64,000 nucleotides of DNA from Paraspadella gotoi (GCA_051294375.1 CM119264.1:28624696-28688695), one strand, 5' to 3'. Positions 7,516-61,102 are shown, counted from the first letter of the stretch. Program-made: numbers and translations. The notes: a model not told the origin generated them from the sequence alone.

Positions 7516-10001
7516 TCAGTTTTCATCGGCAGCAGCGGTGGAAACGGCGAAAGGTTTTTCCACTGGAATAACTCCGCAATCGTCGATAACAACCTAGAAA
7601 GAGTAACAATTTCCTCATTGCTGGTTCTCATTACATCTCATCGAATTTACTTTTTCTTGAGGAACGTCCTTATCGTTTGTTATAACTTGCTCAACTTGAC
7701 GGACGACTTGCATCCCTAAAATGGAAACTGGAAAATGAGCAACTTTGCCCCACACAGACTGACGAAATCGAATGCTATACATATATGGTAGTGCGGGGTA
7801 ATTCGAAACACTTTTTTCGCATAGCAAACATATTTGAAAAAAAAAATACTGGTAATATATCTAGGAAAGTGTTCCCGTACCAGATTGATGTAGTCGTTTT
7901 TATCGTGCGGCCCCTAGAGGTCGCATTTTTTTTTTAAATTGCAAAGTGTTCCGTTTTACCCCACCCTGGGGTAATTCGGAACACTTAATAAATTATAAAT
8001 ATTTTTCATAATATTAAGGAAAATAAAAATTAAAACACTATTATTAAGTGCATAGATCCTTTCATGGCTAAATTTTACTTTCGCCGACCGCGGTTTTGAA
8101 AAACCACTTAAAAATACTTATTTTTTTTTAAAATTTAAAAAAAATATTACTTAATTACCTTAACCCTAAAGCTTATTAACCCTAACCACCACTAACCCTA
8201 AACCACCCCTAAAACACCTTTACCCCTAACCCCGGTCGGCGAAAGTAAAAGTAACCCGCCTTTTCATTAATGTTTTGTCTAAAAAATTTTAAATTTTATA
8301 TTCCGAAGTGAATAAAATGATTTTTATTACTATGTTCTCACTTTTGACAAATTATTGAATAACAGTAGATACGAAATTTGCATTTATTTTTTGATTTATA
8401 GTATTTTTGACAAAGTTTTTTTTATTTCCTACCATTACTGCATTTCGTCCCCATATTCTTTTCCATTTAATATTGGTTTTCACTTTATTTTTTTATTTTT
8501 AATATTATTTTTTTCTTATTATTTGTATTTATAATTTGTATTTATCTTTTTAAATTTTATTTTATTCTTTACTTCCATTTCCTAATATTTTTATTAATAT
8601 TAATTTTATTTTAATTTCACCTTATAATTTTATAACCTTATTTAGGCATTAAATTCCATTCAAAACTTGTTTATATTTTTAGGGCTTAAAATATATTTTT
8701 TTAATATAATATTACTATAACAATTTTTTTCGCCTAATTATTCCACAAATGTTGCTAACTGTTATTATTATTTAGTAAATTATTACTAATCCGTTAAAAA
8801 AAGCATATTGGGTAACACAGGTGTTCCGTTTTACCCCAATTTAATTGTAGCTATGTAAAAAATAATTAAATTATTTTTTCGAAATGAACTCTACAATAAT
8901 TAAAAATTAGTAGTCTCATCTATCAGGTCAGGTCAGGGGCAAGATAGCTTGTTTATTAAATGAATGGATAATTTTTATATTGGTTGTACCAATTTCATAT
9001 TATTATTCCATATTCATATTACGTGAAATATGACTGTGACAGAGGGTTGAAAACGACTACTCCAAGACTAAATTTGACTAGCAGCAGCAGCGGAATGTTG
9101 TAACTTTAATTTTGGAATGTCAAGTTGGTGAAATATTTAATGAACCCAAAAAAGTTTAGTTCACAATTATATTATTTCAGAATTACCCCGTACTACCCTA
9201 CAAGATACGTTAAGTTCACCTTTTAGCACTTTTCCAAAAGTAGTGTGGGTGGCATCAAGCCATGGACAGTTCGTGAAAGTTATGTAGAACTGACATCCGT
9301 TGGTATCGCGACCAGCGTTGGCCATCGCGACCCAACCTTTAATTTTAATACAAAAAGTTTAAATTTTTTAATTTAGAAAAAAAAGAATTTACCTCAACGT
9401 CAACGAAAAAAAACAAAACAATTATTTATTTCTTATTCCAAACAACCACTTTTCCAAATTAACTTTTAAAACAATGTTATCATTAGACATTGAACCTGAG
9501 CCATAATGTTTGACGATGAAATTTTCATCGGGAAATCTTTCTCCGTAAATACTAATGCTGCCTGTTCCATCTCCATTCAGGACGTCGCCACCCTTGTAAA
9601 AGATTTATAAATTGATACAAGATGTATAAATTATATGATATTCGATCGAGGTTAAACCAAACCTGCATCATGAACCCTTTTATGACTCTGTGAAATGATG
9701 AGCCCTTGTAGGTCAGACCCTCAACGGTTCCCGCGGCAATCGTTTCAAAATTGTGAACAGTTTTCGGGGAGGTGTTGCCAAATAGCCCGATTTCAATGCG
9801 ACCTTAATGACAAAAATGAGCATTTAACCAAGTAACTCAAAAGTGTGCGAGTATATTTTATAGCGACGGAAGAAACAACTCACCAGTTTTGCGGCCTCCA
9901 ATGGAAACATCAAGAAAAACTTTGGAAGTTACAAGAGTATCGCTTCCAAATGCAGGTAGTTCAAGTAACGATATAAAAAGACAATAAAATAGAAGCGTCA
10001 T
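7516..10001 (-). CDS. PPIB: Secretory-pathway cyclophilin (cyclophilin B-type peptidyl-prolyl isomerase)
   Basis: Exons 10001-9884, 9802-9663, 9592-9496, 9336-9220, 7715-7651, 7593-7516. Signal peptide, then [91 protein letters not shown]. Confidence 0.93.
8073..8250. mobile_element. Short IR-bounded element with TAACCC-rich core (copy 1)
   Basis: Perfect 17-bp IR TTTTACTTTCGCCGACC (8073-8089) / GGTCGGCGAAAGTAAAA (8234-8250) around degenerate TAACCCT repeats. Related copy at 32548-32744. Confidence 0.6.
8925..9000 (+). repeat. Dispersed repeat family A, terminal copy ending in ATTGGT-TGT-ACCAAT hairpin
   Basis: GTCAGGGGCAAGATAGCTTGTTTATTAAATGAATGGATAATTTTTATATTGGTTGTACCAATTTCATA recurs at ~20430, ~20920, ~38975, ~39170, ~45650 and ~48650. 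Confidence 0.75.
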
Positions 10002-10720
10002 TGTCAATTGTTGACTTTTTGATGGAATTGAAAACTTGTTAAATTTTTCTCTGTGAAAAATTAAAGGAAACAAAAAAATCCCCGAATAATAATAAAATAA
10101 TAATAATAGAGTTCAAGATATTTTTCAAAAAAAATTTAAATGTCAATAAGATCCAATTGTGAAGTCAAATTGTAAGAGCCATTGAACTGGTGAACTTTTT
10201 TCCCGCTGATGGAAGATAAAAAATCTTGCGAAGACTTCTTGATAAAGTCCCTCAAATTTGCAATAGCATAACACTTCCTGATCTCAAAATTTATCAAAAA
10301 CAAGCGGGCGGTGAGGGACAATTCACTCCCAAGAATTAAAAAAATATTTTATTCAATTAATACTAGTTAAGGAAGAAGTTGTGAAGTTCTTTGCAAGCTG
10401 GGAAGGGAACGCTTCTCTCGTCACGTACTCTATAGGCGAGAATTGTCGAAGCGCAAGAAAACTTCCAGCGTAAAGTTAAAGCGAAAAAATAGCTTGGGGT
10501 TCTTCGCGGGAAAGTTGGCTCCTGCGCCGTAGTCAAACGACAAATGCTGCACATAAGAATTGTCAATTGATTCGGCTTACTCTGAAACGTTACACATTAC
10601 ACAATCAATTTTTATTAAAAACTAACTGAAGTCTACAATTTTCAATTAAACTAACAAATTCGAATAAATATGAGTTTCCCGGGAAGGGGGGTCTTCTTCG
10701 AGTCAATTTATCTCTCTTCG

Positions 10721-11663
10721 TCATTGTATTTCCCACGAAAAAAAATCGTTTTCAATACGAAATTCGTAGATCTGGAAACAAGAATCAATTGTTACACGTC
10801 CACCGATTAACTCGACCAGAATTCGAAAACCGACCTTGGCGTAAAGTCTCGAGATCGCGGGAGGAATGTTTTGCGGGCTTGGTACGCAAATGGTGACGCT
10901 TCCGGTCGAGAATATCCGCAAAAGCGCCTTTAAGTCACGGCAGCGGAAAGCGGCACCGGGATGAAGTTCGGGCTCAAAGTCAACCTCCTGAAAAAAATGG
11001 CCCAACGCTCTTGGGTATGACTTATTTACTGTAATGACTATGGAACTCCAACAACCAATCTTGCCACAATCACTTTGGGGTATTTCTCGGCGAACTTATG
11101 AATCCTGACGCCGAAAGGAAAAACACAGGTAGCGAGGACATTCGTGACGCGGAATCGTGCGAACCGAACTTTGTAACCGAGTTTCATTAACATGCGACCG
11201 ATTCGCCGGCAACCTTATTTCGGAAAAAAGTGAGCATTTTTTTTTAATATTCAACTACGAAATAATTGATTAAAAATATAAAATGATGAAATAAAGCTGG
11301 ACCTTTCTTGGCTTCTTCCTCAGAACGAGCGCCCGCGATGGAGACTTTTCCCGATCGCCAGATGGAGCCAGTGATGAGCGGAGAGCGGAGACGAATTAAA
11401 ACGACCTCCCTTTCCGGGCAATACTGGGTATTCCACAAATTTAACGTTACTTTTCGCAGATCGAGGTGGCAACACACTGTAATAACGACAAAAGCCCTTA
11501 ATATTCGAAAGGGGAATGGGCAATGAACCGCCAGCTCAACAGTAAACGTTATACCAGCAAACGAGGCAACGACGTTGTTGATGTAAACATCCAACGGAGG
11601 TGCTGTTTTCTTAAAATTGGAATTTCCAAAGAAATTCAATGATTGATTAGTTTGTAGATTCAT
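10721..11663 (-). CDS. TBPL1: TBP-like factor TRF2/TLF
   Basis: Exons 11663-11555, 11476-11303, 11213-11074, 10987-10835, 10771-10721, all phase-consistent. LDVYINNVVASF, CHLDLRKV, LRSPLITGSIWRSGKV.IAGARSEEEAKKG, VTNVLATC.FPFGVR, FEPELHPGAAFR...LRIFSTGSVT match the TLF/TRF2 subtype rather than TBP. Last-exon frame is less certain (homopolymer). Confidence 0.9.
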
Positions 11664-11793
11664 TGGACTAGATCTTTTAAAAAAAACGTTACACGATGAG
11701 CGAAAGGTCGACAAATCAATCACAATGTCGCGCACGACCTAATGTTTATTATAATATATAGTTGAATAAAAACACTTGGTAACAGTTCGATTT

Positions 11794-13466
11794 TCAAAAA
11801 ATGACTTGCTCTCTGAAATGCTTCTGCAACTTGTTGGCTTTGACCCCGAGGCGCATGTGGCTCTTTTGGAAGGCGTTTCGGGCAAAGGTTTCGTCCTTGG
11901 CCTTGACTTTGGCGGCTTCGCCAGTCGAGCCCGTCCAACCCAGAGCTCTATAATGCGACAAAAGCTTTTGCACAGCCGTTCTTTGCTTCGAGACGACGGC
12001 GTTATGGAATCTTGGAGGACAAAAAAGGAGATACGATGGTGATACGCGGGTTCGAGAAACAACTTCACATTAAAGAATCGAACCTTGGATTGAGCGATTG
12101 TCGATAGTAGCGCTGCAAGGAACGATGTCCGACCGTTGCGCCGGAGGGAAGAACCAGTTGATATCCATCACCATCTAATTCTTCGATCGATAAATCGTCT
12201 TCTGAACAGGAATCTAATAATATTTTTACCATAATCGTATCTTAAAAATAATAATAATAATAATAATATTCAAATATTTAGAAGCGCAGTGGCGAACCTT
12301 CAGTAGTACCACATTCCACCTCCATGTCCGTATCAACGGTTTTCTCGGGATTGTAGTCAGGATAACTTGGTCGGTAGTCGTAATAGTCCGAATATTCTAA
12401 AAAAGCGTCACCTGATCCAACGAAATAAGTTAAAAGAGGACAACATTTTAACAGTAGTCACCGCCATTACCTTCATGAAGCATTTTTGTGTGTCCCTTGT
12501 CTTGCATATGCTTCTGAGCGGCTTCCACACTCTGAAAAGCCTTCCCCTTTTCGTTGCACCAAAGGCAGAGAAATCCACAGCCGACTTTCTCGCCAAGGTA
12601 AGTGAGAAGCCCCGCGGGATCCACGAGGTATTCCAGATCGGGAATGAAAAAGCTGTGGGTCGTGGACATGTGCACCAGGTTGTCTTCGACCGACTTGAAC
12701 TTCTTGCAGCAGAACAAACAGGTCAGGTTCGAAAGGGGCTTTCCCCCGCCCCACAAAAGACCGTCGTTATCTCCGTCAAGCCCTTGGTACGGGATGGGAA
12801 AAGAAACTGGTATTTCTAACAAAAGTAATTGAGAAATAAAATTTCAATAAAAAAAAAAAAAAAACAAGGAATGAGACTTCGCTTACCTTCCTCCGCGTCC
12901 GCCTCCTCTCCCTCGTCCTCATCCAAGCTTTCCCAACCTTCTTCGTCTTCATCTTCTTCCTCCTCCATCTCCTCCTTGGCCGCCTTTATCGCGGCGACCC
13001 TCTCCTTCGGTCCCGGACCCCGCCTCCTCTTCGCCTCCACCGAAGATTCCGACTTCTTGGCCACGATCACCACCGCTTCGTCCGCTCCACGTTTGGCCGC
13101 CGCCTCCTTGTGCTTCTTCGATTCGAGATGACTGCGCAAGGAATTGTCGGAGGCGAAGGTCTTGGAGCAAACTGCGCAGCGGCTCGCGGTGGACGAAGTC
13201 GTTTCGGCCTTAGACTCCTTGATAAGTTGGTCGGTCTTTTCGACGAAAGCCTTGAGAGTGATTGAAGGCAGCGAAACCACTTTGCGCTTGAGGTTGTATC
13301 TGGAAATCGGGGTTGACAAAGGAGTTAACTAATGCGCACTTAACCTCTGAAGTAGTTTGTGGGCTAACCTGTGCCATTCCGACTTGTAATGGAGTCTTTG
13401 TTGATCCCCAACGTCGAATTGGACTCGACAAGTGACGCAGGTAAACATTCCGCCGCCGGTTAACAT
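11794..13466 (-). CDS. ZNF622: ZNF622/REI1 pre-60S maturation zinc-finger protein
   Basis: About six exons: 13466-13369, 13299-12887, 12815-~12460, ~12400-12298, ~12213-12084, ~12015-11794. FTCVTCRVQF..QRLHYKSEWHRYNLKRKV, CAVCSKTF..LRSHLESKKH, CLFC..LVHMSTTHSFFIPD..YLGEKVGCGFLCLWCNEKGK, LVLPSGATVGHRSLQRYYRQ, YRALGWTG, HFREQVIF*. Confidence 0.93.
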
Positions 13467-13513
13467 TTTTTTTTCTCGACGACCCTTTGGCTCAAAGCTT
13501 TGATTAAAAATGT

Positions 13514-13768
13514 CTAATTGGAGTGCAAGAACCCGGCCTTCTTCAAAAGAAAAGGCGCCAACTGCAAAGTGATGACTGTGACGGCGAATTGCGTGAGGCT
13601 TCGCTTCACTTGGGACAATGCCAATCGGTTTTCGGCTTCCGGGTCGGACAGTGCTGTGAATAGAGGATGGGAACATGCAAGCTTGACAAAAGACCGCGAA
13701 ACAAATGGTTTTCTCATAAACATGAACAAAACTCAAATTTACGAACCTTTTTGTCCGATGCGAAGCAT
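13514..13768 (-). CDS. TOMM5: Mitochondrial import receptor subunit TOM5-like microprotein (53 aa, two exons)
   Basis: Exon 1 13768-13747 (AAAAG|GTTCGT), 93-nt intron, exon 2 13653-13514 (TTCACAG|). Product MLRIGQKALSDPEAENRLALSQVKRSLTQFAVTVITLQLAPFLLKKAGFLHSN resembles metazoan TOM5 as recalled (M.RI...DPEE...V..S...F...V..L...PF.LKK). Confidence 0.75.
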
Positions 13769-13849
13769 AATTTAACGTGTCTAAAATGATAAAAACGAAA
13801 GAATCAATGGCAAACAATTAAAAAAAAAATACATAGTTCATGTCATTAA

Positions 13850-16417
13850 TTAATAAGGATGAGACTTGAATGAATTTAAATGGAATCTGCCGGTGGATGG
13901 AGTCTTTTGTGAAGCCGGTACAAAATCCTCATCATCCCCATCTTCAGATTTTTCGTCGCGTTCGAAAAGATCCCCGCATCTTCGGCTGGTGACAGTTCTC
14001 TGAGGACGACGATTGAGAAAGTTCGCCGGGGTTTGTGAAGGAAAAACTATGTCATCGTTATCGTGGTCGTCGTCTTTGTCAACGGCAATCGTTTCTCGAC
14101 AAGATCGAGGGTCGAGTTGATCTTCATCGTATTTCCGTCCAATTTCCGGTTTTTGGGAGGAAAAGACGACGTCGTCGCTCGAGTTGGCAGACGAATCCAC
14201 GTTACGGTCGTCCGACGAAGCGTTCCCGGTCGAAAAAAGGTTGGAGTTCCTCGAGGGGCTTTCGGCGATGCTCCCGATCGCTGGGGAATTGTTGCTAGAT
14301 CCCAATGCTTTAAGTCGCTATGGAAAAAAAGAAAAGAAAAGGTAATCGCCGTCAGTATCGATAAAAATAAATAATCCGACACAAGCTTAGACAAATCAAT
14401 AACCTTGAGCAACTGAGAAGCGGAGTTTTCATCGGTCTCAACCGATTGATATTTTTCGTCATCACAGTAATTTGAGGAAGAGAGATTGTCAAAGATGTGA
14501 TTGTCGGAATGGTCTTGATTGGATGAGGGCCAAGCAATCCAGAATAAATTAAAATATAAATATAAATTTCATAAAAAGATTAGTTAAAAATATCATGATT
14601 CGCAAAGTAATAGACTTATTATCATCATTACCATCATTACAACAGAGATATCCCTCTGTTAGACTTACCTCGAGATTCGTTGACGTGAGGTATAAATGAT
14701 CTCCGCTTAGTGAGAAACATAAGGGATTTCCTTGCGGATCTTCGCGCCTTCGGACTCAACTCTTCGAGACAAGTCTTCATTAGTTCGTCATCTTCGTCCG
14801 ACGACCAAAAGTGATTGGACTGAAACATCAATTGGATTTGGAATTATGTTATCAGCCTTTAAACGGTCTACGACTCCTCTAAATCATTAAAACTTACGTC
14901 GAAGTCGTGAAAAGGTACGATGGACAAAGTTTCTGTTTTGACTCCAGAATTAAAACCGGGTCCAGGTCTCGTCTTCTCTTCCGACGAACAACTGGATGCC
15001 GATATCGGTCGAGTTTGCGGCGGAGTACGAAAGGCTCCGCAAACGGGTTCCCGGAATCCCTTCGCTCCAACGGGAGTTAAGGGAGGGTATGAAGGGACGA
15101 CCGGAACTTTGAAGGCTTGAGCGGTAGTGGGAGTTGAGTGGAGTGGCGCCGAAGTCGGACTAGAAACGACGCCCGGCCCTGATCGAAGCCGATCCGGCAC
15201 AGCCGAGGGCTTCGGGGAAAAAAGGGTTGGTCCTAGCGAAGTTGGGGAGACGTAAGGCACGAAGGGAACCGGAAGTGAAGGGACGGAAGAGTCGAGGAAA
15301 GAGGAGTCGTCTCGACTCGAAGACGAGGATTGTCCGAAATCTGCTTGAACGCTCGCGTCGGCCACCTCGACGCGAGAGAGACTGGATGAGACGTCGTCGA
15401 AGGATGAGGACGTGACTGGAGATGCTAGACTGTCGAGGGAAGCATCGGCGAATCCGTGGGCGTCTTCCTCGAAAGGGAGAGTCACTTGGACGGAGGAATC
15501 GACGACTTGAACGAAATCTGCATCGTCTTCATTATTTTGGTCGACACCGCTGCGGTCATTTTCCCGCCCCGTGAATGAGCAATTTTCTTCTATTTGAGAG
15601 GCATCGAGCGCGAGGGAGGTTTGAATAGCAGTGTCACACACCTCAACGTAGGACAAATTCTGCATTAAAAATAAATAAGTTTGTAAAAAATAACTAGAGA
15701 CAAGGATCGGACAAACTGTTCAGTAAAGTATAAACTTAAACTCGCCTGTTGTCGTTGACTGGAATCTTGAACCGAAAGTTGCGAAAATACATCGTGAAGT
15801 TTTTCGATTTTGGCGGCGGCGGAAACGTAAAGCGATTGATGCGATTCTATCGATACAGGATTAAATTGATAAAAATTTTATATTTTCATGAAACAGATAA
15901 AAAGTAATATATTTAAATATTTAAAACAAAAATATTTAACAAATAAATAAAATCATAAATATAAGTTATTTTAAATCTAAAAAATAAAAAATAAAGATAG
16001 TGAAACAAGTAATTTTGCAACTTTCATATATATATCACCCGGCTTCGTTGGAGATCCGTAAAGCGGAAACTCGAAGCTTCGATCTTCGGAATGCTCGGTC
16101 AAGGCTTCTGGAATCTGAGACTCAGAGATGTCCACGGAAGAGACGGTGAGGTGTGTCAGAGCTTGACTCAAACCCGATAGATCTGACGACCTCGTTGAGT
16201 GGAGATGGTCGCCATCGCCGACGACGTTTGTCAAGTTGGAATCGTTTTCGTCGTTTGATTCGGATGACAAAACGTCGGTAGCGTCGAAACGATAACCTCT
16301 TCCATTTTCCCTCTTTTTCTTAGTTCCAGGTTTGATAGAGTTGAGTCGGGCAGACCGGCCGACCATGGACGCGCCTCCGCTCTTCTGCGACTCGCGAATG
16401 CGAAGGTTGCGGCTCAT
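13850..16417 (-). CDS. Uncharacterised multi-exon, intrinsically disordered Ser/Asp/Pro-rich protein
   Basis: Phase-compatible exons ~16417-16022, 15660-14898, ~14822-14729, ~14510-14405, ~14325-13850 with canonical sites (e.g. GAC|GTAAGT, CGAG|GTAAGT, TTTTCCATAG|). No domain recognised. Confidence 0.65.
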
Positions 16418-17543
16418 GACGAAGAGGGCGACGCAGTTAGCTCCACACAGTTTAGATTTCTCTTAACCGCGCGTCGCGGCATCGATCCAAAATATCTAAG
16501 AGGACAAAGATCAAATACGAAAAAAAGGGCGTGTGCTTAACATTATTTCGTTTTAGCGATACACGACGTGATAGTTGCTTAGAAATATACGACATTCAAA
16601 AACGTAGAAAAACTATGGCGCTCAAAAGTCATGACTTGATACATTAATAACATGCCATAAATTTGCTACGATATGACAAACTGATAGGTTTTACTTAACT
16701 GCTATTACTCTTCTAAATGGCACAAAGATATAATCTCGCAATATATATAATTTATTAAAACATTTCCGAAATCCAGAGCAGTCCCGTGGACCAGCTGATT
16801 ACCACCCAGTTTTTTACAAAAGGACAAAGAAATGAGGTTAAAAATAAACCTTTTTAATTAGTTTAGGACAATTATTCCATATGAAGATAAAATTTTGTCT
16901 AAATTTAATCCTGAAAACAACAAAATTTATATTGACGAAAGAGGGGAAAAAATTTTGAAATATACGAAACTAAACCGAGCTTTAGGTCATTCAGGGTTAT
17001 GAGCATGTATCAACATCTTGGCAACATACATCAATCCGTACGTAGTAATAATAAAATGCCTAGGCAATGAATAATCATTCATTAATGATTCAGATTGGGT
17101 TGTTAACTTAAAATTTTAGGGCCACGAAGACATCTGGCCATTTTTTTTCCTGATTATGACGTTATACGAGTCAATGCTTCCCTCCAATGTTAAACGAGGC
17201 ACTTGGTAGATCTAATATTACAAAATAACTTAGATTACTTAATTTTATCCAATCAAAAGTCCTTTATCTACCAGGTAGACCTCACTGTTCGTTATCGCCA
17301 GAGAAGGCGCTGAATGCATATCTGATAACATTGATACTTTTAGCAAAAAAAAAAGAAAGAAATATGGATTACAATAAAAAAAAGAATTGAGATAAGTGCT
17401 ACAATTAATTACAAAAAAAAACAACTAACAAGCGGGAGACAGTCTCTCGTAAACGTTTAATGAGGGTGACGAGAGCGAGCCTTTGCAAGGACCAACGCGG
17501 GTTTTGGGTTTCGTTTCAGGCCGCTTTCAATTTTTTCCGCTCG

Positions 17544-22269: not shown

Positions 22270-25200
22270 CACTTCCTCTCCAATTCTCACTTTGTACTGA
22301 TTAAGAGTGTTGAACGCCACGTAAGCAATCAGATCCACTCGTTTCCTCCTAATTTCTCTCTCAAAGGCCAACAGTTCTTGAATTTCCCGTCAACGCTTTC
22401 TCCTTCGCGAGTCTCAACTGCTTTTCCTCTTCCGTCTCCGGTGGCTTCTTCGGGCTGCCCTTTCCGCCTTTCTTCCCGCCTTTTTTCCCGCCCTTTTTCG
22501 CGTTCCAGTTCGTGTTGATGTCAAAGACGTCGTCGTCGGAGAAATAATCATCCATGGCGCTGTCGTTTACATTTTCCTCTACTTCCGATTCATCGTCGGA
22601 TTCATTTTCGGATTCATCGTCGTCATCTTCGTCGTCGTCGCTTTGCCCGCTACCGGCGTTGATGTTATGCTTTCCCTTGTTCTTTCCTTTCTTCCCCTTT
22701 TTCCCTTTTCCGCCCTTCTCTTCTTTGGGCGGATTCAAGAGTTCGCTCCCTTTCGGCGGCGAGGTGTAGATCTGAAACGCCATCTCCTGAACCTTGGTCA
22801 AATTGGCCAGGGCCTCTTTGTGAGCCTCGTTCAAAATCTTGACGTCCCAAGGAAGATTCGGATCGTTGGGTTGTTCGAGAAAAGGATGTTTCTCCGCCAC
22901 CAAAGCGGGTCCCTTTTTGGCCCCGCCCTTTCCCTTTTTGTCGTCCTTTTTATTTTTTTTCCCTTTGGCCTTGTTCACATTCTCGTCAAAGTTTTCGTTC
23001 GACTCTTCTACCTCTACGGGGTCAGGAAAACTCGGCACGGCCGTCGCCTCCACTTCAACGTTCTTGATGATCATTCGCGGATAAACGTCTTCCCATTTAA
23101 CGTTTTCCAAATCCAGATTTTCTTTATTCATCTTGGCTGCGACTTTGCTCACCGTTTGAGCGAGACTGGGGACATGAGCCGGAGCGATCGGGGACGGAGT
23201 TCGAGGCGGCGGCGGCGGCGGAACCGATTCGTCCGGAACATCATCACCTTCCTCTTCAGTCGGCGAAGGCGGCGGCGGCGGTGGCGGCAGAACCGACACG
23301 AATATCAACGCCGGTCGAGTAAGATTTTGTAAGGCGTCCATCTCTTTAATCTCCAACCCGGTGGACGAAGTGTAATAATCAATGAGAAAAGCGGCGATTC
23401 GACCAAAGAGCTCAACCTCTGCCGATATCAGACTCAAGAAATAGTTTAACGTCATTCCCGTCAGATGGCCGATCCTCTCGTCGAAAAAGAATCGCTCCTT
23501 GTATTTCTTCACGCAGCGAATGACGCGCTCCGTCTCTTCCGCCATCTCCGCTTTGAGATCGTCGATCCGCAGATGCAACTCGGCCAGAGTCTCCTCGTCC
23601 CGCCACATCTCTGGCGGTAGCTCGACGAGATACTCGAGGTGCTTGTCCTTGACGTCCTCGAGCATCGCCGCTTCCCGGACGATCGCCAAGTAATCCGCGA
23701 GATCTTTGGTCTTGTCGTTCAAAAATCCGGTGAGGTCGCGCTGATGATCTTCCATTCGACGAAACAATCGAATGAGGTATGTCAGGTAAGAGCATTCGAT
23801 CAACTTCCAAGATTTCGTCAAGACTTTGAGCCTCTCCGCCGGAATCTCGGTCTGGAGATAATCCGCCGGATTGAATCCGACCGGCTTCGCCTCCGCCGGT
23901 TCCTTTTTTTCCTTTTTTCCTTTTTTACCCTTCTTTCCTTTGCCTCCCTTGGCGCTCACGTTGGCGTCGGACATGGCGCTATAATTGGTGTTAGTTTCCC
24001 AGCGGCTGGATGTGGGCGATTCCGAGGCGACGACGATGTCCAAAAACGGGTGGGCGGCGCCGGGCAAGCTCTCTTTATCGTCGTCGACTTCATCGCTATC
24101 TTCGTCGCTATCGTCGTCGCTATCGTCGTCGCTATCGTCGCTGGAATCGCTCGAGAGATTCGCGTTCGAATTCGTGTTCCGATTTTTGGATTTTCCTTTT
24201 TTACCGCCTTTTTTGTCTTTGCCTTTTTTTCCTTTTCCTTTTTTTCCCTTCGGCGGAGGTGACTCGACGGGGGGCGGTTCCGGGGGCTTCTCCAACTCCT
24301 CCAAGATCTTCAACGTCTTCTCTAGGGTGACCTCTTCCAACTTTAACCAGACGTCGTCGGCGACGTCTTCGTGTTCTCTATCGCCGTCGACGGTCCTCAC
24401 AGCGGCGAAACCTTGGAACCAGGCGCCCATCTCCTTCCAGGCCTCCATCGTGGCGTCGATCCGCGTCAGCGCTTGTCGGCGCCAGTCCGACGTCGACGGA
24501 ACGGCCTGTGGTTTCCCCGGAAACGGCGACAGACTCCCGAAAGGCATGGGCACGAATTCTAGATGGCGCTCGGTCGACGCCATCTTGGATTTTTCCTCTT
24601 CTTTCTCGCCGAATTCCGTCTCCATTTCGTAGACGCCTCGGTTCCTCTTGACGACCTCATCGAACGATCTCTCCACCTTAATGAAGCAATCCAATCCGCA
24701 CTTGGGATTGTCGCATTCCTGCGGTTCGATCAACACGGGATCCTTGACGATCGAAGAGGCGTACATCGGCATCTTCCGCCAAAGTTCCCCGCGGAAGCAT
24801 CCGTCGACGGTGGTGAGCAATGAAGGAGGCCGCGGATCCGTGGACAGGGGACAAACGTAGCCGGTGAGGTAACGGGACAACCAAGCGGCCTGAGCGACGT
24901 TGCGCGGGAACCCGTCGAGGACCCAACCCGTATCGTCTGAGATTTGAGTGATCTGGATGGCGGCCAACTTGGCGAGGTGTTTATCGAGAGTGGGTTTCCC
25001 TTCCTAGAGGGATTAGGGGGGGGGGAAGGGACTGAACCCTGGACTCTTCTTAGTCGAGTGAAAATATATGGTTAATAAACAATGGCTAAAACATATTAGA
25101 AAATTATTAGTTGCGGCGCCAGTACTCGCGGAGCAACTCTATAAGTCACTTTTCGGTCGGACTGTTGGTCGGTATGTCTGTCCGGTATGTATGTCTGCCT

Positions 25201-36194: not shown

Positions 36195-39100
36195 ATGAAG
36201 GACGATATCCGCGACGACGCCGAAGACGACGACGACGACGACAGTTTCCGACCCGACGGCCACATCGACGCCTGGACATCTCGCGATGCGAACTTCGCCG
36301 TCGACAACACGAATCGATCCGCGCGGAAGACCAAGGGCGACAAATCCGTCCAAGTGGACAAGACTCGGGAAAAGTGGAGAGTGTCGGTGCTACGCGGCAA
36401 CGTACCGCGCCGCGCGCTCGACGAGCTTCTTCTCAAGATCGGCCTCTGGGGCTTCTTCCCCCTCGGCGTCCTTCTTCTCCTCTACTACGCCAACGCCCTC
36501 GCCAAAATGTACATGCCGCTCGCCACCTTCGTCGCCTGGATGCCGCATCATTGCTGCAAAGTCAATGGATCGCTGAGGGTGAGGAAAATGGGTGAGGGNN
36601 NNNNNNNNNNNNNNNNNNNNNNNNNNNNNNNNNNNNNNNNNNNNNNNNNNNNNNNNNNNNNNNNNNNNNNNNNNNNNNNNNNNNNNNNNNNNNNNNNNNN
36701 NNNNNNNNNNNNNNNNNNNNNNNNNNNNNNNNNNNNNNNNNNNNNNNNNNNNNNNNNNNNNNNNNNNNNNNNNNNNNNNNNNNNNNNNNNNNNNNNNNNN
36801 NNNNNNNCCTCCTTTCTTCTTTCATTCCTTCCTTCCTTCCTTTTTTCATTCCTTTCTTCTTTCCTTCTTTCCTTTTTTCATTCCTTCCTTCCTTCCTTCC
36901 TTCCTTCCTTCCTNNNNNNNNNNNNNNNNNNNNNNNNNNNNTCCTTCCTTCCTTCCTTCCTTCTTTCCTTTCTTCTTTCCTTCTCAACAGGAAGCAATAG
37001 ACGCTACGTCGAGTCCATCCCTACTCTCTTGGACCTCCAAACCTCGACCTCACTCGACGGACTCGTTGAGCGGAGGCCACGACTCGGCGACCTGCAAGAA
37101 ATTGGTCCGACANNNNNNNNNNNNNNNNNNNNNNNNNNNNNNNNNNNNNNNNNNNNNNNNNNNNNNNNNNNNNNNNNNNNNNNNNNNNNNNNNNNNNNNN
37201 NNNNNNNNNNNNNNNNNNNNNNNNNNNNNNNNNNNNNNNNNNNNNNNNNNNNNNNNNNNNNNNNNNNNNNNNNNNNNNNNNNNNNNNNNNNNNNNNNNNN
37301 NNNNNNNNNNNNNNNNNNNNNNNNNNNNNNNNNNNNNNNNNNNNNNNNNNNNNNAAAACCTGTTACCCTAATAGTAATACTGTTACAGGTAACATGTAAC
37401 ATGTAACAGGTTCTATGTTTGTTTTCCAAAGAGCGCGCCAAATGTCCTTCAAAATGTGTTTTTGCTTCACCAAAAGAGCATCGAGCCTTTTTATTCACGA
37501 GCCTTTCGAACTTAGGTTGGAATTACGCGACTCAAAAATCCAACTCTCTCTCCGCGGACGAGGATCTCGGCTGCCGCAACGTCCACTACGTGGCGCAGAT
37601 CGCCAACGCCGTCTTCATGGGCGGGTTCGGAGTCGGCGGACTCTTCCACGGTGTACTCGCCGACGCCTACGGGCGAAAGCCGGTCCTCGTGACCTCGACG
37701 TGGTCCTTGGGGATCTACGGATTCGTGACCGGGACGGTTCCCGACGAGGCGAGTCCGGAACGAGACATCCCTGCCCGCATGATGTCGTCTAAGGTGTTAA
37801 TTTATGGCACCTCGTTTTTTGTAGACGGCTTTTATAGGGGTGCGTTTTCTTCACGGGTTTTTCGTGGGCGGAATCAGTCTCGCTTCCTCCACCATGATCT
37901 GCGAGCTTTTTCCTTCGAAGCAGAGAGCTATTCCGCACATGCTGATACAAGTAATTNNNNNNNNNNNNNNNNNNNNNNNNNNNNNNNNNNNNNNNNNNNN
38001 NNNNNNNNNNNNNNNNNNNNNNNNNNNNNNNNNNNNNNNNNNNNNNNNNNNNNNNNNNNNNNNNNNNNNNNNNNNNNNNNNNNNNNNNNNNNNNNNNNNN
38101 NNNNNNNNNNNNNNNNNNNNNNNNNNNNNNNNNNNNNNNNNNNNNNNNNNNNNNNNNNNNNNNNNNNNNNNNNNNNNNNNNNNNNNNNNNNNNNNNNNNN
38201 NNNNNNNNNNNNNNNNNNNNNNNNNNNNNNNNNNNNNNNNNNNNNNNNNNNNNNNNNNNNNNNNNNNNNNNNNNNNNNNNNNNNNNNNNNNNNNNNNNNN
38301 NNNNNNNNNNNNNNNNNNNNNNNNNNNNNNNNNNNNNNNNNNNNNNNNNNNNNNNNNNNNNNNNNNNNNNNNNNNNNNNNNNNNNNNNNNNNNNNNNNNN
38401 NNNNNNNNNNNNNNNNNNNNNNNNNNNNNNNNNNNNNNNNNNNNNNNNNNNNNNNNTATCACCCTCGCCGCGGCCACAGGCGCGCCTGCGAGTATCTCCA
38501 ATCGGTGATTGATTCGCGCGGGATGGAGGCCGACGTCTACGAGGAACTCTACATCAACGCCTCCCGTATGGTCGGTCAGTCGGGCTCCGAGATCGATTTC
38601 AAGCCGCCCGTCGAGGAAACCAACGTCAACGCCGGCAACGACGACGACGACGATGACGACGACGACGACGAGGGCATCGTCGTCGACGGAGACAAAAACA
38701 ACAACAACGACGACGACGGCGAGGACGACGACGACGACGACGATGATGACGACGACGAAAACCGGAACCGAAACGAGCAACCGTATCCTAGCAACGAGAC
38801 GAACGAGTCTTTCCTCAAGCCGAATGGTCGTCGTCCTTCTGCGTCCGAGTGGAGTTTGGAGGCGATCATCGTCGTCGGCGTGCTTTCCACTTTGACGCTT
38901 ATAAACGTGAGTGGGTCGGGTGGGGGGGGGGGAAAGAGGTTGGTTGAAGGGGGGGGAGTTGTATTCACCGCATATAAAATTGGTACAACCAATATATTTT
39001 ATTTATTTATTTATTCTACTTACGTTTAAATGCGTAAAAAAATTTGCTATAGCTATTGGACAATGGACATGGACATTGGACATGGACATTGGACAATGGA

Positions 39101-40829
39101 CATGGTCGCTATTTTATTAGATTAATGTCGTCTACCGCTGAGGCAATAAAATAGGCTTTTTAAATACAGTTATATGAAATTGGTACAACCAATATAAAAA
39201 TTATCCATTCATTTAATAAATAAGCTATCTTGCCCCTGACTTTGGACAGGCTTTGGTGGTTTAAGGCCTCCATCACTCTTACAAGATAATGACATAGCAG
39301 GTCCCTGCAAGCTTTCAATCAAGACTCTCTCACAGTCCCGTTTATTCACTCCCAGAGTACCTGGCTTCCCTATCAATGAAGTGGAAAATATTTCAAAGAA
39401 TGTTTCAATTGTATGAAAAGACCACTCCCTTAAGTATTAGATCGGGGAATACCTATTGTACCTATTATATGATCCCATGATCACAATATCATATGTAAAT
39501 TGATATTAGATTAAATATTTTTCTAATATTTTTATGTAATAAAGAAAACGTGCAAATGAAGTTGAAATTCAGGCTGAAAAAAAAAAACAACAAAAAACAA
39601 AACAAATGAGGAATCAAATATTTAATCAATGCGGTGCAACAGCTTGAAATTGCACTTCGTTTTTTTTTTCACCTCTCTTTTTTCCCCTCGGCTCTTTCTT
39701 TCAACTCCCTGCTTCTTCCTGCCTGTCNNNNNNNNNNNNNNNNNNNNNNNNNNNNNNNNNNNNNNNNNNNNNNNNNNNNNNNNNNNNNNNNNNNNNNNNN
39801 NNNNNNNNNNNNNNNNNNNNNNNNNNNNNNNNNNNNNNNNNNNNNNNNNNNNNNNNNNNNNNNNNNNNNNNNNNNNNNNNNNNNNNNNNNNNNNNNNNNN
39901 NNNNNNNNNNNNNNNNNNNNNNNNNNNNNNNNNNNNNNNNNNNNNNNNNNNNNNNNNNNNNNNNNNNNNNNNNNNNNNNNNNNNNNNNNNNNCCTCCCTC
40001 CCTCACTTCCTCCCAGTTCTTCGTGTACTACGGCCTCGTTCTCTCCACGGACGAATTCGCCGGCGAACGCTACCTCAACTTCTTCCTCTTCACCCTCGCG
40101 GATTTGGCGGGAGGCGTCGTCGTCGTCGTCGTCGTCAACCGAGCGCCTCGACGTCAAATCCTCTTCTTCCTCTACGACGCCATCGTCGTCGTCGTCGTCG
40201 CTCTCATCGTCTACGAATTTCTCCACCGGGCGGAGCCACGACCCGCGAATTACAACGTGGTCGTCCTCGTGGCGCATCTGCTCATCAAGTCGAGCATCTT
40301 GGGGGCGCTGTCCGTCATGGAATTGTCCGCAATAGAGATACCGCCCACTTCGATTCGATCAATCAGCACGGGGATCTTTATCGCTTNNNNNNNNNNNNNN
40401 NNNNNNNNNNNNNNNNNNNNNNNNNNNNNNNNNNNNNNNNNNNNNNNNNNNNNNNNNNNNNNNNNNNNNNNNNNNNNNNNNNNNNNNNNNNNNNNNNNNN
40501 NNNNNNNNNNNNNNNNNNNNNNNNNNNNNNNNNNNNNNNNNNNNNNNNNNNNNNNNNNNNNNNNNNNNNNNNNNNNNNNNNNNNNNNNNNNNNNNNNNNN
40601 NNNNNNNNNNNNNNNNNNNNNCCTCGCCGGCATCACCTCTTCCTTCGTCGCCCTCCTCCTTCGACGCTACGACCTCGTGGCGGAATTCCTCTTCCTCTTC
40701 CTCGTCCTGATGGCGACGACGTTAATATGGGCGTTGCCGGAAATGAAGGACGTCTCGATTCCGCGCGACGCCAAAGACTTGAAGCAATGCTTCAAAAACA
40801 CCAAGAATAAATTCCCTTTTATGCATTAG
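36195..40829 (+). CDS. MFS transporter, SLC22/organic cation transporter family
   Basis: LDELLLKIGLWGFF..F..WMPHHCC N-terminus; EDLGC..AQIANAVFMGG..G.LADAYGRKPV; RFLHGFFVGG..ICELFP..R; VYYGL..YLNFFL; EIPPTSIRS..G; LPEMKD..IP C-terminal signature. Model is interrupted by gaps. Confidence 0.87.
39170..39390 (-). repeat. Dispersed repeat family A, longest copy
   Basis: Matches 20920-21115 and 48650-48810; short terminal fragment also at ~38975-39000. Confidence 0.75.

Positions 40830-52453: not shown

Positions 52454-61102
<8,649 letters not shown>

What the first reader, a model, noticed from the sequence alone, without database searches (positions are those of the whole stretch)
10721..16417. 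Operon-like core: four unrelated co-oriented genes separated by 81, 47 and 130 nt
Seen: the unknown S/D-rich gene stops at 13850, 81 nt before the TOM5-like ATG (13768). TOM5 stops at 13514, 47 nt before the ZNF622 ATG (13466). ZNF622 stops at 11794, 130 nt before the TBPL1 ATG (11663). These gaps are far shorter than the introns and repeat-filled spacers elsewhere in the window. Established: nematodes, tunicates and some other invertebrates resolve such clusters of housekeeping genes by spliced-leader trans-splicing. Inference: one polycistronic transcription unit linking mitochondrial import, 60S maturation and a core-promoter factor. The host lineage is unknown, so novelty depends on it.
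Basis: partly seen in the sequence, partly recalled or inferred. Interest (0 to 1): 0.85.

Follow-up and report, generated by a model that had tools for sequence, protein, structure and literature searches.

The report
Arrow-worm operon with a two-gene mRNA
The four tightly packed genes sit in an arrow-worm (chaetognath) genome, a phylum where operons resolved by spliced-leader trans-splicing are already known, but the middle pair (TOM5 and ZNF622) seems to stay together on one mature mRNA in every related species sampled.

Summary
Four spliced, minus-strand genes have coding gaps of 81, 47 and 130 nt: an unknown S/D-rich protein, TOM5, ZNF622/REI1 and TBPL1.

The host is almost certainly a chaetognath. 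The window's ZNF622 nests (NJ bootstrap 100/100) among unnamed marine-metatranscriptome proteins. Their transcripts begin with the published chaetognath spliced leaders, including an exact 36-nt SL2.0.

Operons resolved by SL trans-splicing were reported in this phylum in 2008. In Paraspadella gotoi they hold 18% of genes (2025). So the operon reading is ordinary for this host.

One junction does not fit. In 22 of 24 transcript contigs, from six relatives, TOM5 and ZNF622 lie on one RNA. The other two contigs are too short upstream to tell. Two contigs run from a full SL through both ORFs to a poly(A) tail. No contig has an SL in the spacer, and one species' 34-nt spacer has no AG at all. ATGs are depleted in the spacers (2 seen, 10.8 expected). 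One isoform joins an SL to TOM5 exon 2, which removes the TOM5 start codon.

The locus most likely yields three mature mRNAs: A, TOM5-ZNF622 (dicistronic) and TBPL1. No transcript from the window's own species was available, so this is inferred.

The parts
13850..16417 (-). Gene A: unknown S/D-rich, probably disordered protein of 656 aa. Exons 16417-16039, 15846-15746, 15659-14898, 14819-14669, 14513-14404, 14317-13850. It is the first tightly linked gene.
   Evidence: The spliced model is in frame. There is no Pfam family and no hit in the word-indexed search. A full-library phmmer search finds only unnamed fragments (P0141 E=1.9e-11, plus P0142-P0144). These share the FWSxDDDELM..LSPK.RRS block, VEVxDASxQ repeats and DDxVxSSQxP repeats and also have no Pfam family.
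16496..16497 (-). Candidate trans-splice acceptor AG for gene A (tttgtcctcttag|ata). It lies 78 nt upstream of the ATG.
   Evidence: Sequence only. The pyrimidine fraction is 0.83 and the score falls in the 94th percentile of AG sites under a rough acceptor matrix.
13769..13849 (-). A-TOM5 gap of 81 nt. It has no AATAAA or ATTAAA.
13781..13782 (-). Predicted SL acceptor of TOM5 (ttcgtttttatcattttag|acacg). The exon starts at 13780, 12 nt before the ATG and 69 nt after gene A's stop codon.
   Evidence: It is a strong acceptor (96th percentile). In all relatives with a complete 5' end, the TOM5 5'UTR is joined to a chaetognath SL.
13514..13768 (-). TOM5 homologue of 53 aa, exons 13768-13747 and 13653-13514. 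It is the upstream cistron of the dicistronic unit.
13654..13655 (-). Acceptor AG of the TOM5 intron (ctctattcacag|cactg). The homologous site is used as an alternative SL acceptor in a relative, which removes the TOM5 AUG.
   Evidence: In L010 a full SL is joined directly to TOM5 exon 2, at the same position after 22 nt of CDS. Use of this site in the window's species is inferred.
13467..13513 (-). TOM5-ZNF622 spacer of 47 nt. It has no ATG and no AATAAA or ATTAAA. It holds a weak AG (exon start 13497) preceded by a tract that is only 56% pyrimidine.
11794..13466 (-). ZNF622/REI1 homologue of 438 aa in six exons. It is the downstream cistron of the dicistronic unit.
11745..11750 (-). AATAAA poly(A) signal 44 nt after the ZNF622 stop. 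It is the first canonical signal downstream of gene A, TOM5 and ZNF622.
11664..11793 (-). ZNF622-TBPL1 gap of 130 nt. Candidate acceptors have exon starts at 11738 (aataaacattag|g) and 11673 (cgttttttttaaaag|atc, 10 nt before the ATG). There is no ATG in the gap.
   Evidence: Sequence only.
10721..11663 (-). TBPL1 (TBP-like factor) homologue of 208 aa in five exons. It is the last tightly linked gene.
10611..10616 (-). AATAAA 105 nt after the TBPL1 stop. A cgtttcag motif follows 27 nt later.

Best explanation
The window comes from a chaetognath (arrow worm) genome, and genes A, TOM5, ZNF622 and TBPL1 form one spliced-leader operon of the kind already described in this phylum.

The proposed mechanism is this. 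A polycistronic precursor is read from upstream of gene A. An SL is added at the strong acceptor 12 nt before the TOM5 ATG (exon start 13780). Another is probably added at an acceptor before TBPL1 (exon start 11673 or 11738).

The 47-nt TOM5-ZNF622 junction is not cut. TOM5 and ZNF622 leave the nucleus as one SL-capped, polyadenylated dicistronic mRNA that uses the AATAAA at 11750.

ZNF622 is then translated in one or both of two ways. Ribosomes may scan past, or re-initiate after, the 53-codon TOM5 ORF, which the absence of ATGs in that interval would allow. Alternatively, a second isoform may carry the SL on TOM5 exon 2 (acceptor at 13655-13654), which deletes the TOM5 AUG and makes the ZNF622 AUG the first one.

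The locus would therefore give three mature mRNA units, not four.

Shown: gene structures and gaps; the chaetognath affinity; SL on TOM5 and TOM5-ZNF622 co-transcripts in six relatives; ATG depletion.

Inferred: that the window's own species behaves the same way; that A and TBPL1 share the precursor; the mode of translation.
For: Lineage.
- The window's ZNF622 is 58-62% identical to 17 unnamed marine-metatranscriptome proteins, against 45-47% to the best named animals.
- It nests inside that group with NJ bootstrap 100/100.
- Their transcripts start with published chaetognath leaders. L003, L099, L105 and L106 carry the exact 36-nt SL2.0. L005-L007 and L104 carry the 3' end of SL1. Other contigs carry further variants.

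Known biology.
- SL trans-splicing and an RPS14-PCNA operon were shown in Spadella (PMC2481426).
- In P. gotoi 18% of genes are in operons, with three SLs and none specific to operons (PMC12460157).

Dicistron.
- In 22 of 24 contigs from six species-level lineages, a TOM5 ORF or its 3' end lies 34-197 nt upstream of ZNF622 on the same strand.
- L105 and L106 run from full SL2.0 through TOM5, a spacer (197 nt in L105) and ZNF622 (469 aa) to a 170-nt 3'UTR and A41.
- No contig has an SL in the spacer. The 34-nt spacer of the P0012 species has no AG.
- In L010 a full SL is joined to TOM5 exon 2, at the same intron position as in the window.

Translation signature.
- The six spacers hold 2 ATGs against 10.8 expected (P=7.5e-4). 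The whole interval between the two start codons holds 4 against 23.
- The window has no ATG in the 187 nt from TOM5 exon 2 to the ZNF622 ATG.

Window features.
- On the minus strand between 16700 and 9900, the only AATAAA sites are after ZNF622 (11750), after TBPL1 (10616) and at 10353. None follows gene A or TOM5.
- A strong acceptor sits 12 nt before the TOM5 ATG.

The linkage looks specific to this lineage. No TOM5 lies next to ZNF622 in 79 non-chaetognath loci, or within 10 kb in Capitella.
Against: - No RNA data from the window's own species could be reached.
- The relatives' contigs are short-read assemblies. They cannot prove that single molecules carry both ORFs. Overlapping transcripts could assemble the same way, for example a ZNF622 start site inside TOM5 or a TOM5 poly(A) site inside ZNF622.
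- The look-up tool shows the longest contigs first. Shorter SL-ZNF622 forms could therefore exist unseen: 10 of the 22 contigs of P0010 are under 2 kb and were not shown.
- The window's spacer does contain an AG (exon start 13497) that scores in the 93rd percentile under a rough matrix built from 15 sites.
- The TOM5 AUG has A at -3 in all six species, so its context is not obviously weak. This does not favour simple leaky scanning.
- One species (L016) has an out-of-frame ATG in TOM5 and a short uORF in the spacer.
- Nothing tests whether A and TBPL1 share the precursor.
- In the relatives, the 150-450 nt seen after the ZNF622 stop holds no TBPL1 coding sequence.
Confidence: 0.68

Rival explanations
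1. Classical four-cistron operon. Every gap, including TOM5-ZNF622, is resolved by SL addition (at 13780, 13497, and 11738 or 11673), giving four monocistronic mRNAs. On this view the dicistronic contigs in relatives are unprocessed or partly processed precursors.
For: - The phylum resolves operons by trans-splicing.
- AG sites exist at all three places in the window.
- The spacers of some relatives hold 5-11 AGs.
- Shorter contigs that might carry SL-ZNF622 were not shown by the look-up.
Against: - None of 24 contigs in six lineages has an SL in the spacer, while 17 show an SL at the TOM5 5' end or on exon 2.
- The P0012 species has no AG in its 34-nt spacer.
- L105 and L106 carry an SL and a poly(A) tail around both ORFs.
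- TOM5 has no poly(A) signal in the window.
- ATG depletion in unalignable spacers points to selection on scanning ribosomes, which a mere precursor would not experience.
Confidence: 0.15
2. No operon. The genome is simply compact at this spot, and each gene has its own promoter inside or just after the upstream gene. The SL is added to separate primary transcripts (outron trans-splicing).
For: - About half of P. gotoi genes are trans-spliced but only 18% are in operons, so an SL alone does not prove polycistrony.
- No transcript crossing the A-TOM5 or ZNF622-TBPL1 junction was seen.
Against: - Gaps of 47-130 nt, with acceptors 10-12 nt from the ATGs, leave no room for a promoter outside the upstream gene.
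- TOM5-ZNF622 co-transcripts are seen in six lineages.
- In L010 an SL on TOM5 exon 2 continues into ZNF622, which needs a precursor covering both genes.
- The field's own operon criterion is met.
Confidence: 0.1
3. Assembly artefact. The TOM5-ZNF622 contigs are chimeras of two overlapping or adjacent mRNAs merged by short-read assemblers and have no biological meaning.
For: All evidence from relatives comes from de novo short-read metatranscriptome assemblies.
Against: - The same join appears in JGI and Logan assemblies of many independent samples, in six lineages with different spacers.
- A 34-nt spacer is probably shorter than a single read (inference; read lengths were not checked).
- The genomic adjacency in the window, found independently, matches the join.
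- ATG depletion is not something an artefact would produce.
Confidence: 0.05

Closest known systems
Chaetognath spliced-leader operons (Spadella cephaloptera RPS14-PCNA, Marletaz 2008, PMC2481426; 1,470 validated operons in Paraspadella gotoi, Piovani 2025, PMC12460157)
   Same: - Same phylum, judged by phylogeny and by the relatives' SLs.
- Co-oriented housekeeping genes less than 250 bp apart.
- Several SL forms are used interchangeably on one acceptor (four forms on the TOM5 acceptor of the P0012 species), matching the reported lack of operon-specific SLs.
- The 3' ends of ZNF622 mRNAs in relatives abut acceptor-like motifs, as in the Spadella case, where the poly(A) site is 3 nt from the acceptor.
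   Different: The TOM5-ZNF622 junction shows no sign of being resolved. The published operon calls rest on distance plus the presence of an SL, and do not separate resolved junctions from unresolved ones.
Nematode (C. elegans) SL2-type operons
   Same: The ZNF622-TBPL1 gap has AATAAA followed about 70 nt later by a U-rich acceptor close to the ATG. From my own knowledge, this is the layout of a C. elegans intercistronic region. The genes are housekeeping or germline-type.
   Different: Chaetognaths have no operon-specific leader. From my own knowledge, C. elegans downstream genes are normally trans-spliced and not left dicistronic.
Directly translated dicistronic mRNAs: Drosophila stoned and Adh-Adhr (reviewed in PMC2776167), green-algal bicistronic loci translated by leaky scanning (PMC11892635 / PMC11291117), plant CDC26-TTM3
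   Same: - A short upstream ORF encodes a real, conserved small protein, followed by a longer ORF on one mature mRNA.
- The arrangement is conserved across deep divergences.
- Start codons are depleted before ORF 2, the signature reported for green algae.
   Different: - Here the mRNA's cap comes from a trans-spliced leader, and the unit sits inside an SL operon.
- The ORF 1 Kozak context is not clearly weak (A at -3 in all six).
- An alternative SL acceptor inside ORF 1 offers a second route to ORF 2. None of the papers I read on those systems mentions such a route.

Membership tests
SL trans-spliced operon (chaetognath/nematode/tunicate type) | The host lineage performs spliced-leader trans-splicing | tested here: met
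   The window's ZNF622 nests (bootstrap 100/100) in a clade whose transcripts carry the published chaetognath SL1, SL2.0 and SL3-like leaders. No SL gene lies in the window itself. None is expected there, because SL genes lie elsewhere in the genome.
SL trans-spliced operon (chaetognath/nematode/tunicate type) | Co-oriented genes with very short intergenic distance (less than 250 bp in the P. gotoi annotation) | tested here: met
   The coding gaps are 81, 47 and 130 nt, all on the minus strand.
SL trans-spliced operon (chaetognath/nematode/tunicate type) | Each downstream gene receives an SL at an acceptor in the intercistronic region | tested here: inconclusive
   - TOM5: met in all relatives with a complete 5' end, and a strong acceptor is present in the window.
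- ZNF622: not met in relatives. No contig has an SL in the spacer, and one spacer has no AG.
- TBPL1: not testable. No chaetognath TBPL1 transcript was recovered.
SL trans-spliced operon (chaetognath/nematode/tunicate type) | One polycistronic precursor from a single upstream promoter | not testable with these tools
   Only the TOM5-ZNF622 junction is spanned by transcripts, and only in relatives. No RNA, CAGE or chromatin data for the window's species were available.
Directly translated dicistronic mRNA | Both ORFs lie on one mature (capped, polyadenylated) mRNA | tested here: met
   L105 and L106 run from full SL through TOM5 and ZNF622 to A41 in single contigs. L003 plus L009 give the same picture in another species. 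Caveat: these are short-read assemblies from relatives, not from the window's species.
Directly translated dicistronic mRNA | Both ORFs encode conserved, functional proteins | tested here: met
   TOM5 has 21 invariant positions across six species, and its profile hits human TOM5 at E=6.7e-6. ZNF622 has a mean column identity of 70% across 18 sequences.
Directly translated dicistronic mRNA | Start-codon depletion between the ORF 1 start and the ORF 2 start | tested here: met
   Spacers hold 2 ATGs against 10.8 expected (P=7.5e-4). The whole interval holds 4 against 23. The window holds none.
Directly translated dicistronic mRNA | Weak initiation context at ORF 1 (needed for leaky scanning) | tested here: inconclusive
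   A is at -3 and no G is at +4 in all six TOM5 starts. ZNF622 mostly has AAAATG. The optimal context in chaetognaths is not known.
TOM5 (small subunit of the mitochondrial outer-membrane translocase) | A protein of about 50 aa that matches the TOM5 family over its full length | tested here: met
   Pfam Tom5 E=1.4e-5 at 25.4 bits, just under the 26.1 cutoff. The profile of six orthologues aligns residues 1-47 with human TOM5 residues 1-48, E=6.7e-6.
ZNF622 / REI1 (60S maturation factor) | zf-C2H2_2 plus JAZ-type zinc fingers, and orthology to ZNF622 | tested here: met
   zf-C2H2_2 E=3.8e-34 and zf-C2H2_jaz E=3.9e-8. Named hits are ZNF622 at E about 1e-100.
TBPL1 / TRF2 (TBP-like factor) | Two TBP repeats, with best matches to TBPL1 and not to TBP | tested here: met
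   TBP domain E=3.7e-38 in two stretches. All named top hits are 'TATA box-binding protein-like 1'.

The most novel reading that the evidence does not exclude
TOM5-ZNF622 is an obligately dicistronic, SL-capped mRNA that has been kept since the last common ancestor of living chaetognaths. The choice of SL acceptor (before TOM5, or on TOM5 exon 2), together with leaky scanning, sets the ratio of a mitochondrial import subunit to a 60S maturation factor. In addition, the 3' ends of upstream operon mRNAs in this phylum are made exactly at the downstream gene's trans-splice acceptor. That would mean trans-splicing and polyadenylation share one cleavage event.
Probability: 0.25. Interest if true: 0.65.

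Novelty: new variant of a known kind. Interest (0 to 1): 0.42.

Why it matters
As an operon, this locus is ordinary once the host is known. Chaetognath operons have been known since 2008 and were catalogued genome-wide in 2025.

What may be new is that, inside a phylum that can resolve polycistrons by trans-splicing, one gene pair has apparently been kept unresolved across all sampled lineages. Its start-codon depletion points to translation of the second ORF from the shared mRNA.

This has two consequences. Operon catalogues built on distance plus SL presence would mix two different things: junctions that are resolved, and true dicistronic mRNAs. It would also give a natural animal case for studying how a small mitochondrial protein and a ribosome-maturation factor are co-expressed from one message. 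It can be tested directly with Iso-Seq reads of the kind generated for P. gotoi, or with new long reads from the window's species.

Tried and rejected
- Rfam scan of the whole window: no family reached threshold, so there is no SL RNA, snRNA or rRNA gene here.
- Search for the 36-nt SL2.0 in the window with up to 3 mismatches: none.
- Look-up of an unspliced exon ORF (14868-15665): not on record. The ZNF622 search returned no near-identical hit either. The window's species therefore seems to be absent from the protein collection.
- TBPL1 homologue search: the best unnamed hits, P0125 and P0128, are not chaetognath. L013's 5' end has no SL, and P0128's contigs could not be read and their origin is undetermined. 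The ZNF622-TBPL1 junction could not be tested in relatives.
- Metagenome scan with the ZNF622 alignment: only 1 of 80 loci (L016) was chaetognath.
- Supplementary gene table of the P. gotoi paper: stored truncated, with no ZNF622, TBPL1 or Tom5 entry in the held part. I could not check whether this locus is already listed as an operon, nor whether the window is P. gotoi.
- Gene A: no named homologue and no Pfam family, in A or in its only four relatives.
- A position-weight matrix built from the 15 cis acceptors discriminates poorly (leave-one-out scores from -4 to 9.6). I used it only qualitatively.
- Contigs L096 and L097 have only 135 and 93 nt upstream of ZNF622 and show neither TOM5 nor an SL. 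They are uninformative.
- Simple leaky scanning as the sole mechanism was considered and not adopted, because the TOM5 AUG context is not weak.

Full report
**Observation.** On the minus strand I built four in-frame spliced gene models:

| Gene | ATG | Stop ends | Exons | Protein |
|---|---|---|---|---|
| A | 16417 | 13850 | 6 | 656 aa |
| TOM5-like | 13768 | 13514 | 2 | 53 aa |
| ZNF622 | 13466 | 11794 | 6 | 438 aa |
| TBPL1 | 11663 | 10721 | 5 | 208 aa |

The coding gaps are 81, 47 and 130 nt. The introns inside these genes are 59-192 nt (median 84), so the gaps are about intron-sized. The next genes on the same strand are much further away. UBE2D lies 1126 nt upstream and cyclophilin B lies 719 nt downstream.

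**Gene identities.**
- TOM5: Pfam Tom5 E=1.4e-5, just under the family cutoff. A profile of six orthologues aligns end to end with human TOM5 from the TOM complex structures, E=6.7e-6.
- ZNF622/REI1: zf-C2H2_2 E=3.8e-34, with named hits at about 1e-100.
- TBPL1: TBP domain E=3.7e-38. All named top hits are TBP-like 1.
- Gene A: no Pfam family and no named relative. A full-library phmmer search found only four unnamed fragments that share its motifs.

**Host lineage.** The window's ZNF622 is 58-62% identical to 17 unnamed proteins from marine metatranscriptomes. It is only 45-47% identical to the best named animals, which are molluscs, annelids and echinoderms.
- In a neighbour-joining tree the window nests inside the unnamed group, with bootstrap 100/100.
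- The transcripts encoding those proteins begin with the leaders published for chaetognaths (PMC2481426, Table 3).
- L003, L099, L105 and L106 carry the exact 36-nt SL2.0, GGAAGCTTATAATTGAGTAGTTTCAATTTGTTTAAA. Others carry the 3' part of SL1 or SL3-like forms.
- Several contigs start with ACATGGG just before the leader. From my own knowledge this looks like the end of a template-switching oligo, so the leader would be the true 5' end. This is an inference.

The window is therefore very probably chaetognath DNA. It is about as far from each sampled lineage as the deepest of them are from each other. A benthic spadellid such as Paraspadella gotoi is possible, but I could not show it.

**What is known in this phylum.** SL trans-splicing and an operon (RPS14-PCNA, with the poly(A) site 3 nt from the acceptor) were reported in Spadella in 2008. 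For P. gotoi, a 2025 paper reports the following:
- trans-splicing in nearly half of the genes;
- 18% of genes in operons, defined as less than 250 bp apart with at least one gene carrying an SL;
- three leaders, none specific to operons;
- enrichment of housekeeping functions among operon genes.

The window's cluster meets that definition. As an operon it is an ordinary member of a known class.

**The TOM5-ZNF622 junction.** This junction does not behave like a resolved operon junction.
- I read 24 ZNF622 transcript contigs from six species-level lineages (P0001, P0002, P0004, P0009, P0010/P0017, P0012).
- In 22 of them a TOM5 ORF, or its 3' end, lies 34-197 nt upstream of ZNF622 on the same strand.
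- The other two contigs have only 93 and 135 nt upstream and say nothing.
- Seventeen contigs carry leader sequence. In sixteen it is joined to the TOM5 5'UTR, and in none to the spacer.
- L105 and L106 are single contigs that run from full SL2.0 through TOM5, a spacer (197 nt in L105) and ZNF622 to a 170-nt 3'UTR and 41 A's.
- In the P0012 species the spacer is 34 nt and has no AG, so it cannot be trans-spliced.
- In L010 a full leader is joined directly to TOM5 exon 2, after the same 22 nt of coding sequence at which the window's TOM5 intron sits. That isoform lacks the TOM5 AUG, and its first ATG after the leader is the ZNF622 start.

**Sign of translation from the shared mRNA.**
- The six spacers cannot be aligned with each other and total 662 nt. 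They hold 2 ATGs where composition predicts 10.8 (P=7.5e-4 by shuffling).
- The whole interval between the two start codons holds 4 ATGs against 23 expected. The coding part of that interval is not independent between species.
- The window has no ATG in the 187 nt from TOM5 exon 2 to the ZNF622 ATG.
- Depletion of start codons before ORF 2 is the signature reported for green-algal bicistronic genes translated by leaky scanning.
- It fits equally well with the exon-2 leader isoform.
- The TOM5 AUG has A at -3 in all six species, so its context is not clearly weak. I cannot choose between the two routes, and both may operate.

**The window's own features agree with this.**
- On the minus strand between 16700 and 9900, the only AATAAA sites are at 11750 (44 nt after the ZNF622 stop), 10616 (105 nt after the TBPL1 stop) and 10353.
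- The only ATTAAA, at 11248, lies inside a TBPL1 intron. No signal follows gene A or TOM5.
- TOM5 therefore has no canonical poly(A) signal of its own.
- A strong acceptor (ttcgtttttatcattttag) sits 12 nt before the TOM5 ATG.
- The AG in the spacer has a poor pyrimidine tract (56%).
- Before TBPL1 there are two candidate acceptors, with exon starts at 11738 and 11673. The second follows a T8 run and lies 10 nt from the ATG.

**Model.** A precursor runs from upstream of gene A through TBPL1. Leaders are added before TOM5 and before TBPL1, and probably before A at 16495. The mature products are SL-A, SL-TOM5-ZNF622 and SL-TBPL1. A minor SL-(TOM5 exon 2)-ZNF622 form may exist as well.

The gene structures, the lineage, the behaviour of the relatives and the ATG depletion are shown. 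The behaviour of the window's own species, the membership of A and TBPL1 in the precursor, and the translation route are inferred.

**Is the linkage older than chaetognaths?** I found no sign of that. None of 79 non-chaetognath ZNF622 loci has a TOM5-like ORF upstream. Capitella has none within 10 kb of its ZNF622.

**Rivals.**
- A fully resolved four-cistron operon remains possible for the window's species, because its spacer has an AG and shorter contigs were not shown to me. Everything seen in the relatives argues against it.
- Independent promoters are unlikely, given the gaps of 47-130 nt and the co-transcripts.
- An assembly artefact is unlikely. The join recurs in independent assemblies, samples and species, and it matches the genomic adjacency in the window.

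**Literature.** Full-text searches found no paper on dicistronic mRNAs in chaetognaths, or on a TOM5-ZNF622 transcript. Directly translated dicistronic mRNAs are known in Drosophila, mammals, plants and green algae.

**Limits.**
- All transcript evidence comes from short-read assemblies of relatives.
- The species is not identified.
- The held copy of the P. gotoi gene table is truncated.

**Verdict.** The locus is an ordinary chaetognath operon, except that its middle pair is probably a conserved dicistronic mRNA.

Noticed in passing
L009 (3' end), L105/L106 (3' end), L099-L101 (3' end): In three relatives the ZNF622 mRNA ends right after a pyrimidine-rich AG motif that looks like a 3' splice site: ccccttttgcag+A20, cttgttttttcag+A41 and ccttgttttctag+aagaaa. 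This recalls the Spadella RPS14-PCNA case, where the poly(A) site is 3 nt from the acceptor. It suggests that the 3' ends of upstream operon genes form at the downstream trans-splice acceptor.
   Followed up: partly
L010 1-60; homologous window site 13653-13655: A full SL3-like leader (GGAAGCTTAAAATTTATCTTCACTTGCTTAAA) is joined directly to TOM5 exon 2, which removes the TOM5 start codon. The same leader type is also used at the normal TOM5 acceptor (L008).
   Followed up: partly
L099-L104, 5' ends: At least four different leaders are spliced to one and the same TOM5 acceptor in one species: SL2.0, SL1, GGAAGCATATATATATAAAACTTGCTTGTTTAAA and ...TTATATTATTTTCCAAGCTTGTTTAAA. The last two are not in the 2008 table of chaetognath leaders.
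   Followed up: partly
L105 versus L106: Two versions of the full dicistronic transcript occur in the same sample. They differ by substitutions in the 5'UTR and by indels in the spacer. They may be alleles or the duplicated gene copies reported for chaetognaths. Both keep the dicistronic layout and have no ATG between the two start codons.
   Followed up: no
window 10353-10581 (-): Between the TBPL1 poly(A) signal (AATAAA at 10616, with cgtttcag 27 nt later) and cyclophilin B lies a stretch of about 230 nt that ends in its own AATAAA (10353). It contains a 42-codon ORF (MCSICRLTTAQEP...). It could be a small or non-coding operon member, or just 3'UTR or spacer.
   Followed up: no
window 10050-10052 (-): Cyclophilin B (ATG at 10001) is preceded by a very strong acceptor (tttaatttttcacag|aga, 98th percentile) 49 nt before its ATG. 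UBE2D, gene A, TOM5, ZNF622, TBPL1 and cyclophilin B are all on the minus strand. The co-transcribed unit could therefore be longer than the four tightly spaced genes.
   Followed up: partly
window 16414-16482 (-): If gene A is trans-spliced at 16495, its leader holds a 22-codon upstream ORF (ATG at 16482). The stop codon of that ORF overlaps the gene A ATG (tcATGa).
   Followed up: no
window 15746 (-): My model of gene A needs a GC donor for intron 2 (cag|gcgagt). The flanking exon is confirmed by similarity to P0144 (SLY.AAAKI..LHD.FSQLSV), but the exact junction is not verified.
   Followed up: partly
L096 1-40: This ZNF622 contig starts with 31 T's followed by attatag, and has no TOM5 in the 135 nt upstream of the ATG. 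It may be an artefact, a pre-mRNA pyrimidine tract, or a species in which the spacer is longer. Unexplained.
   Followed up: no
window about 36500-40700: Several runs of N (masked or unassembled sequence) interrupt ORFs on the plus strand that look like a membrane transporter. I did not test this identity. There are also long (CT)n/(GA)n-type simple repeats elsewhere, for example around 48.8-49.4 kb and 52-53 kb.
   Followed up: no
window 55733-56335 (-) and 22361-24967 (-): An exon with a Patched/sterol-sensing domain (Sterol-sensing E=1.7e-8). Separately, an uninterrupted 868-aa ORF rich in K/G and acidic runs with no Pfam family.
   Followed up: partly
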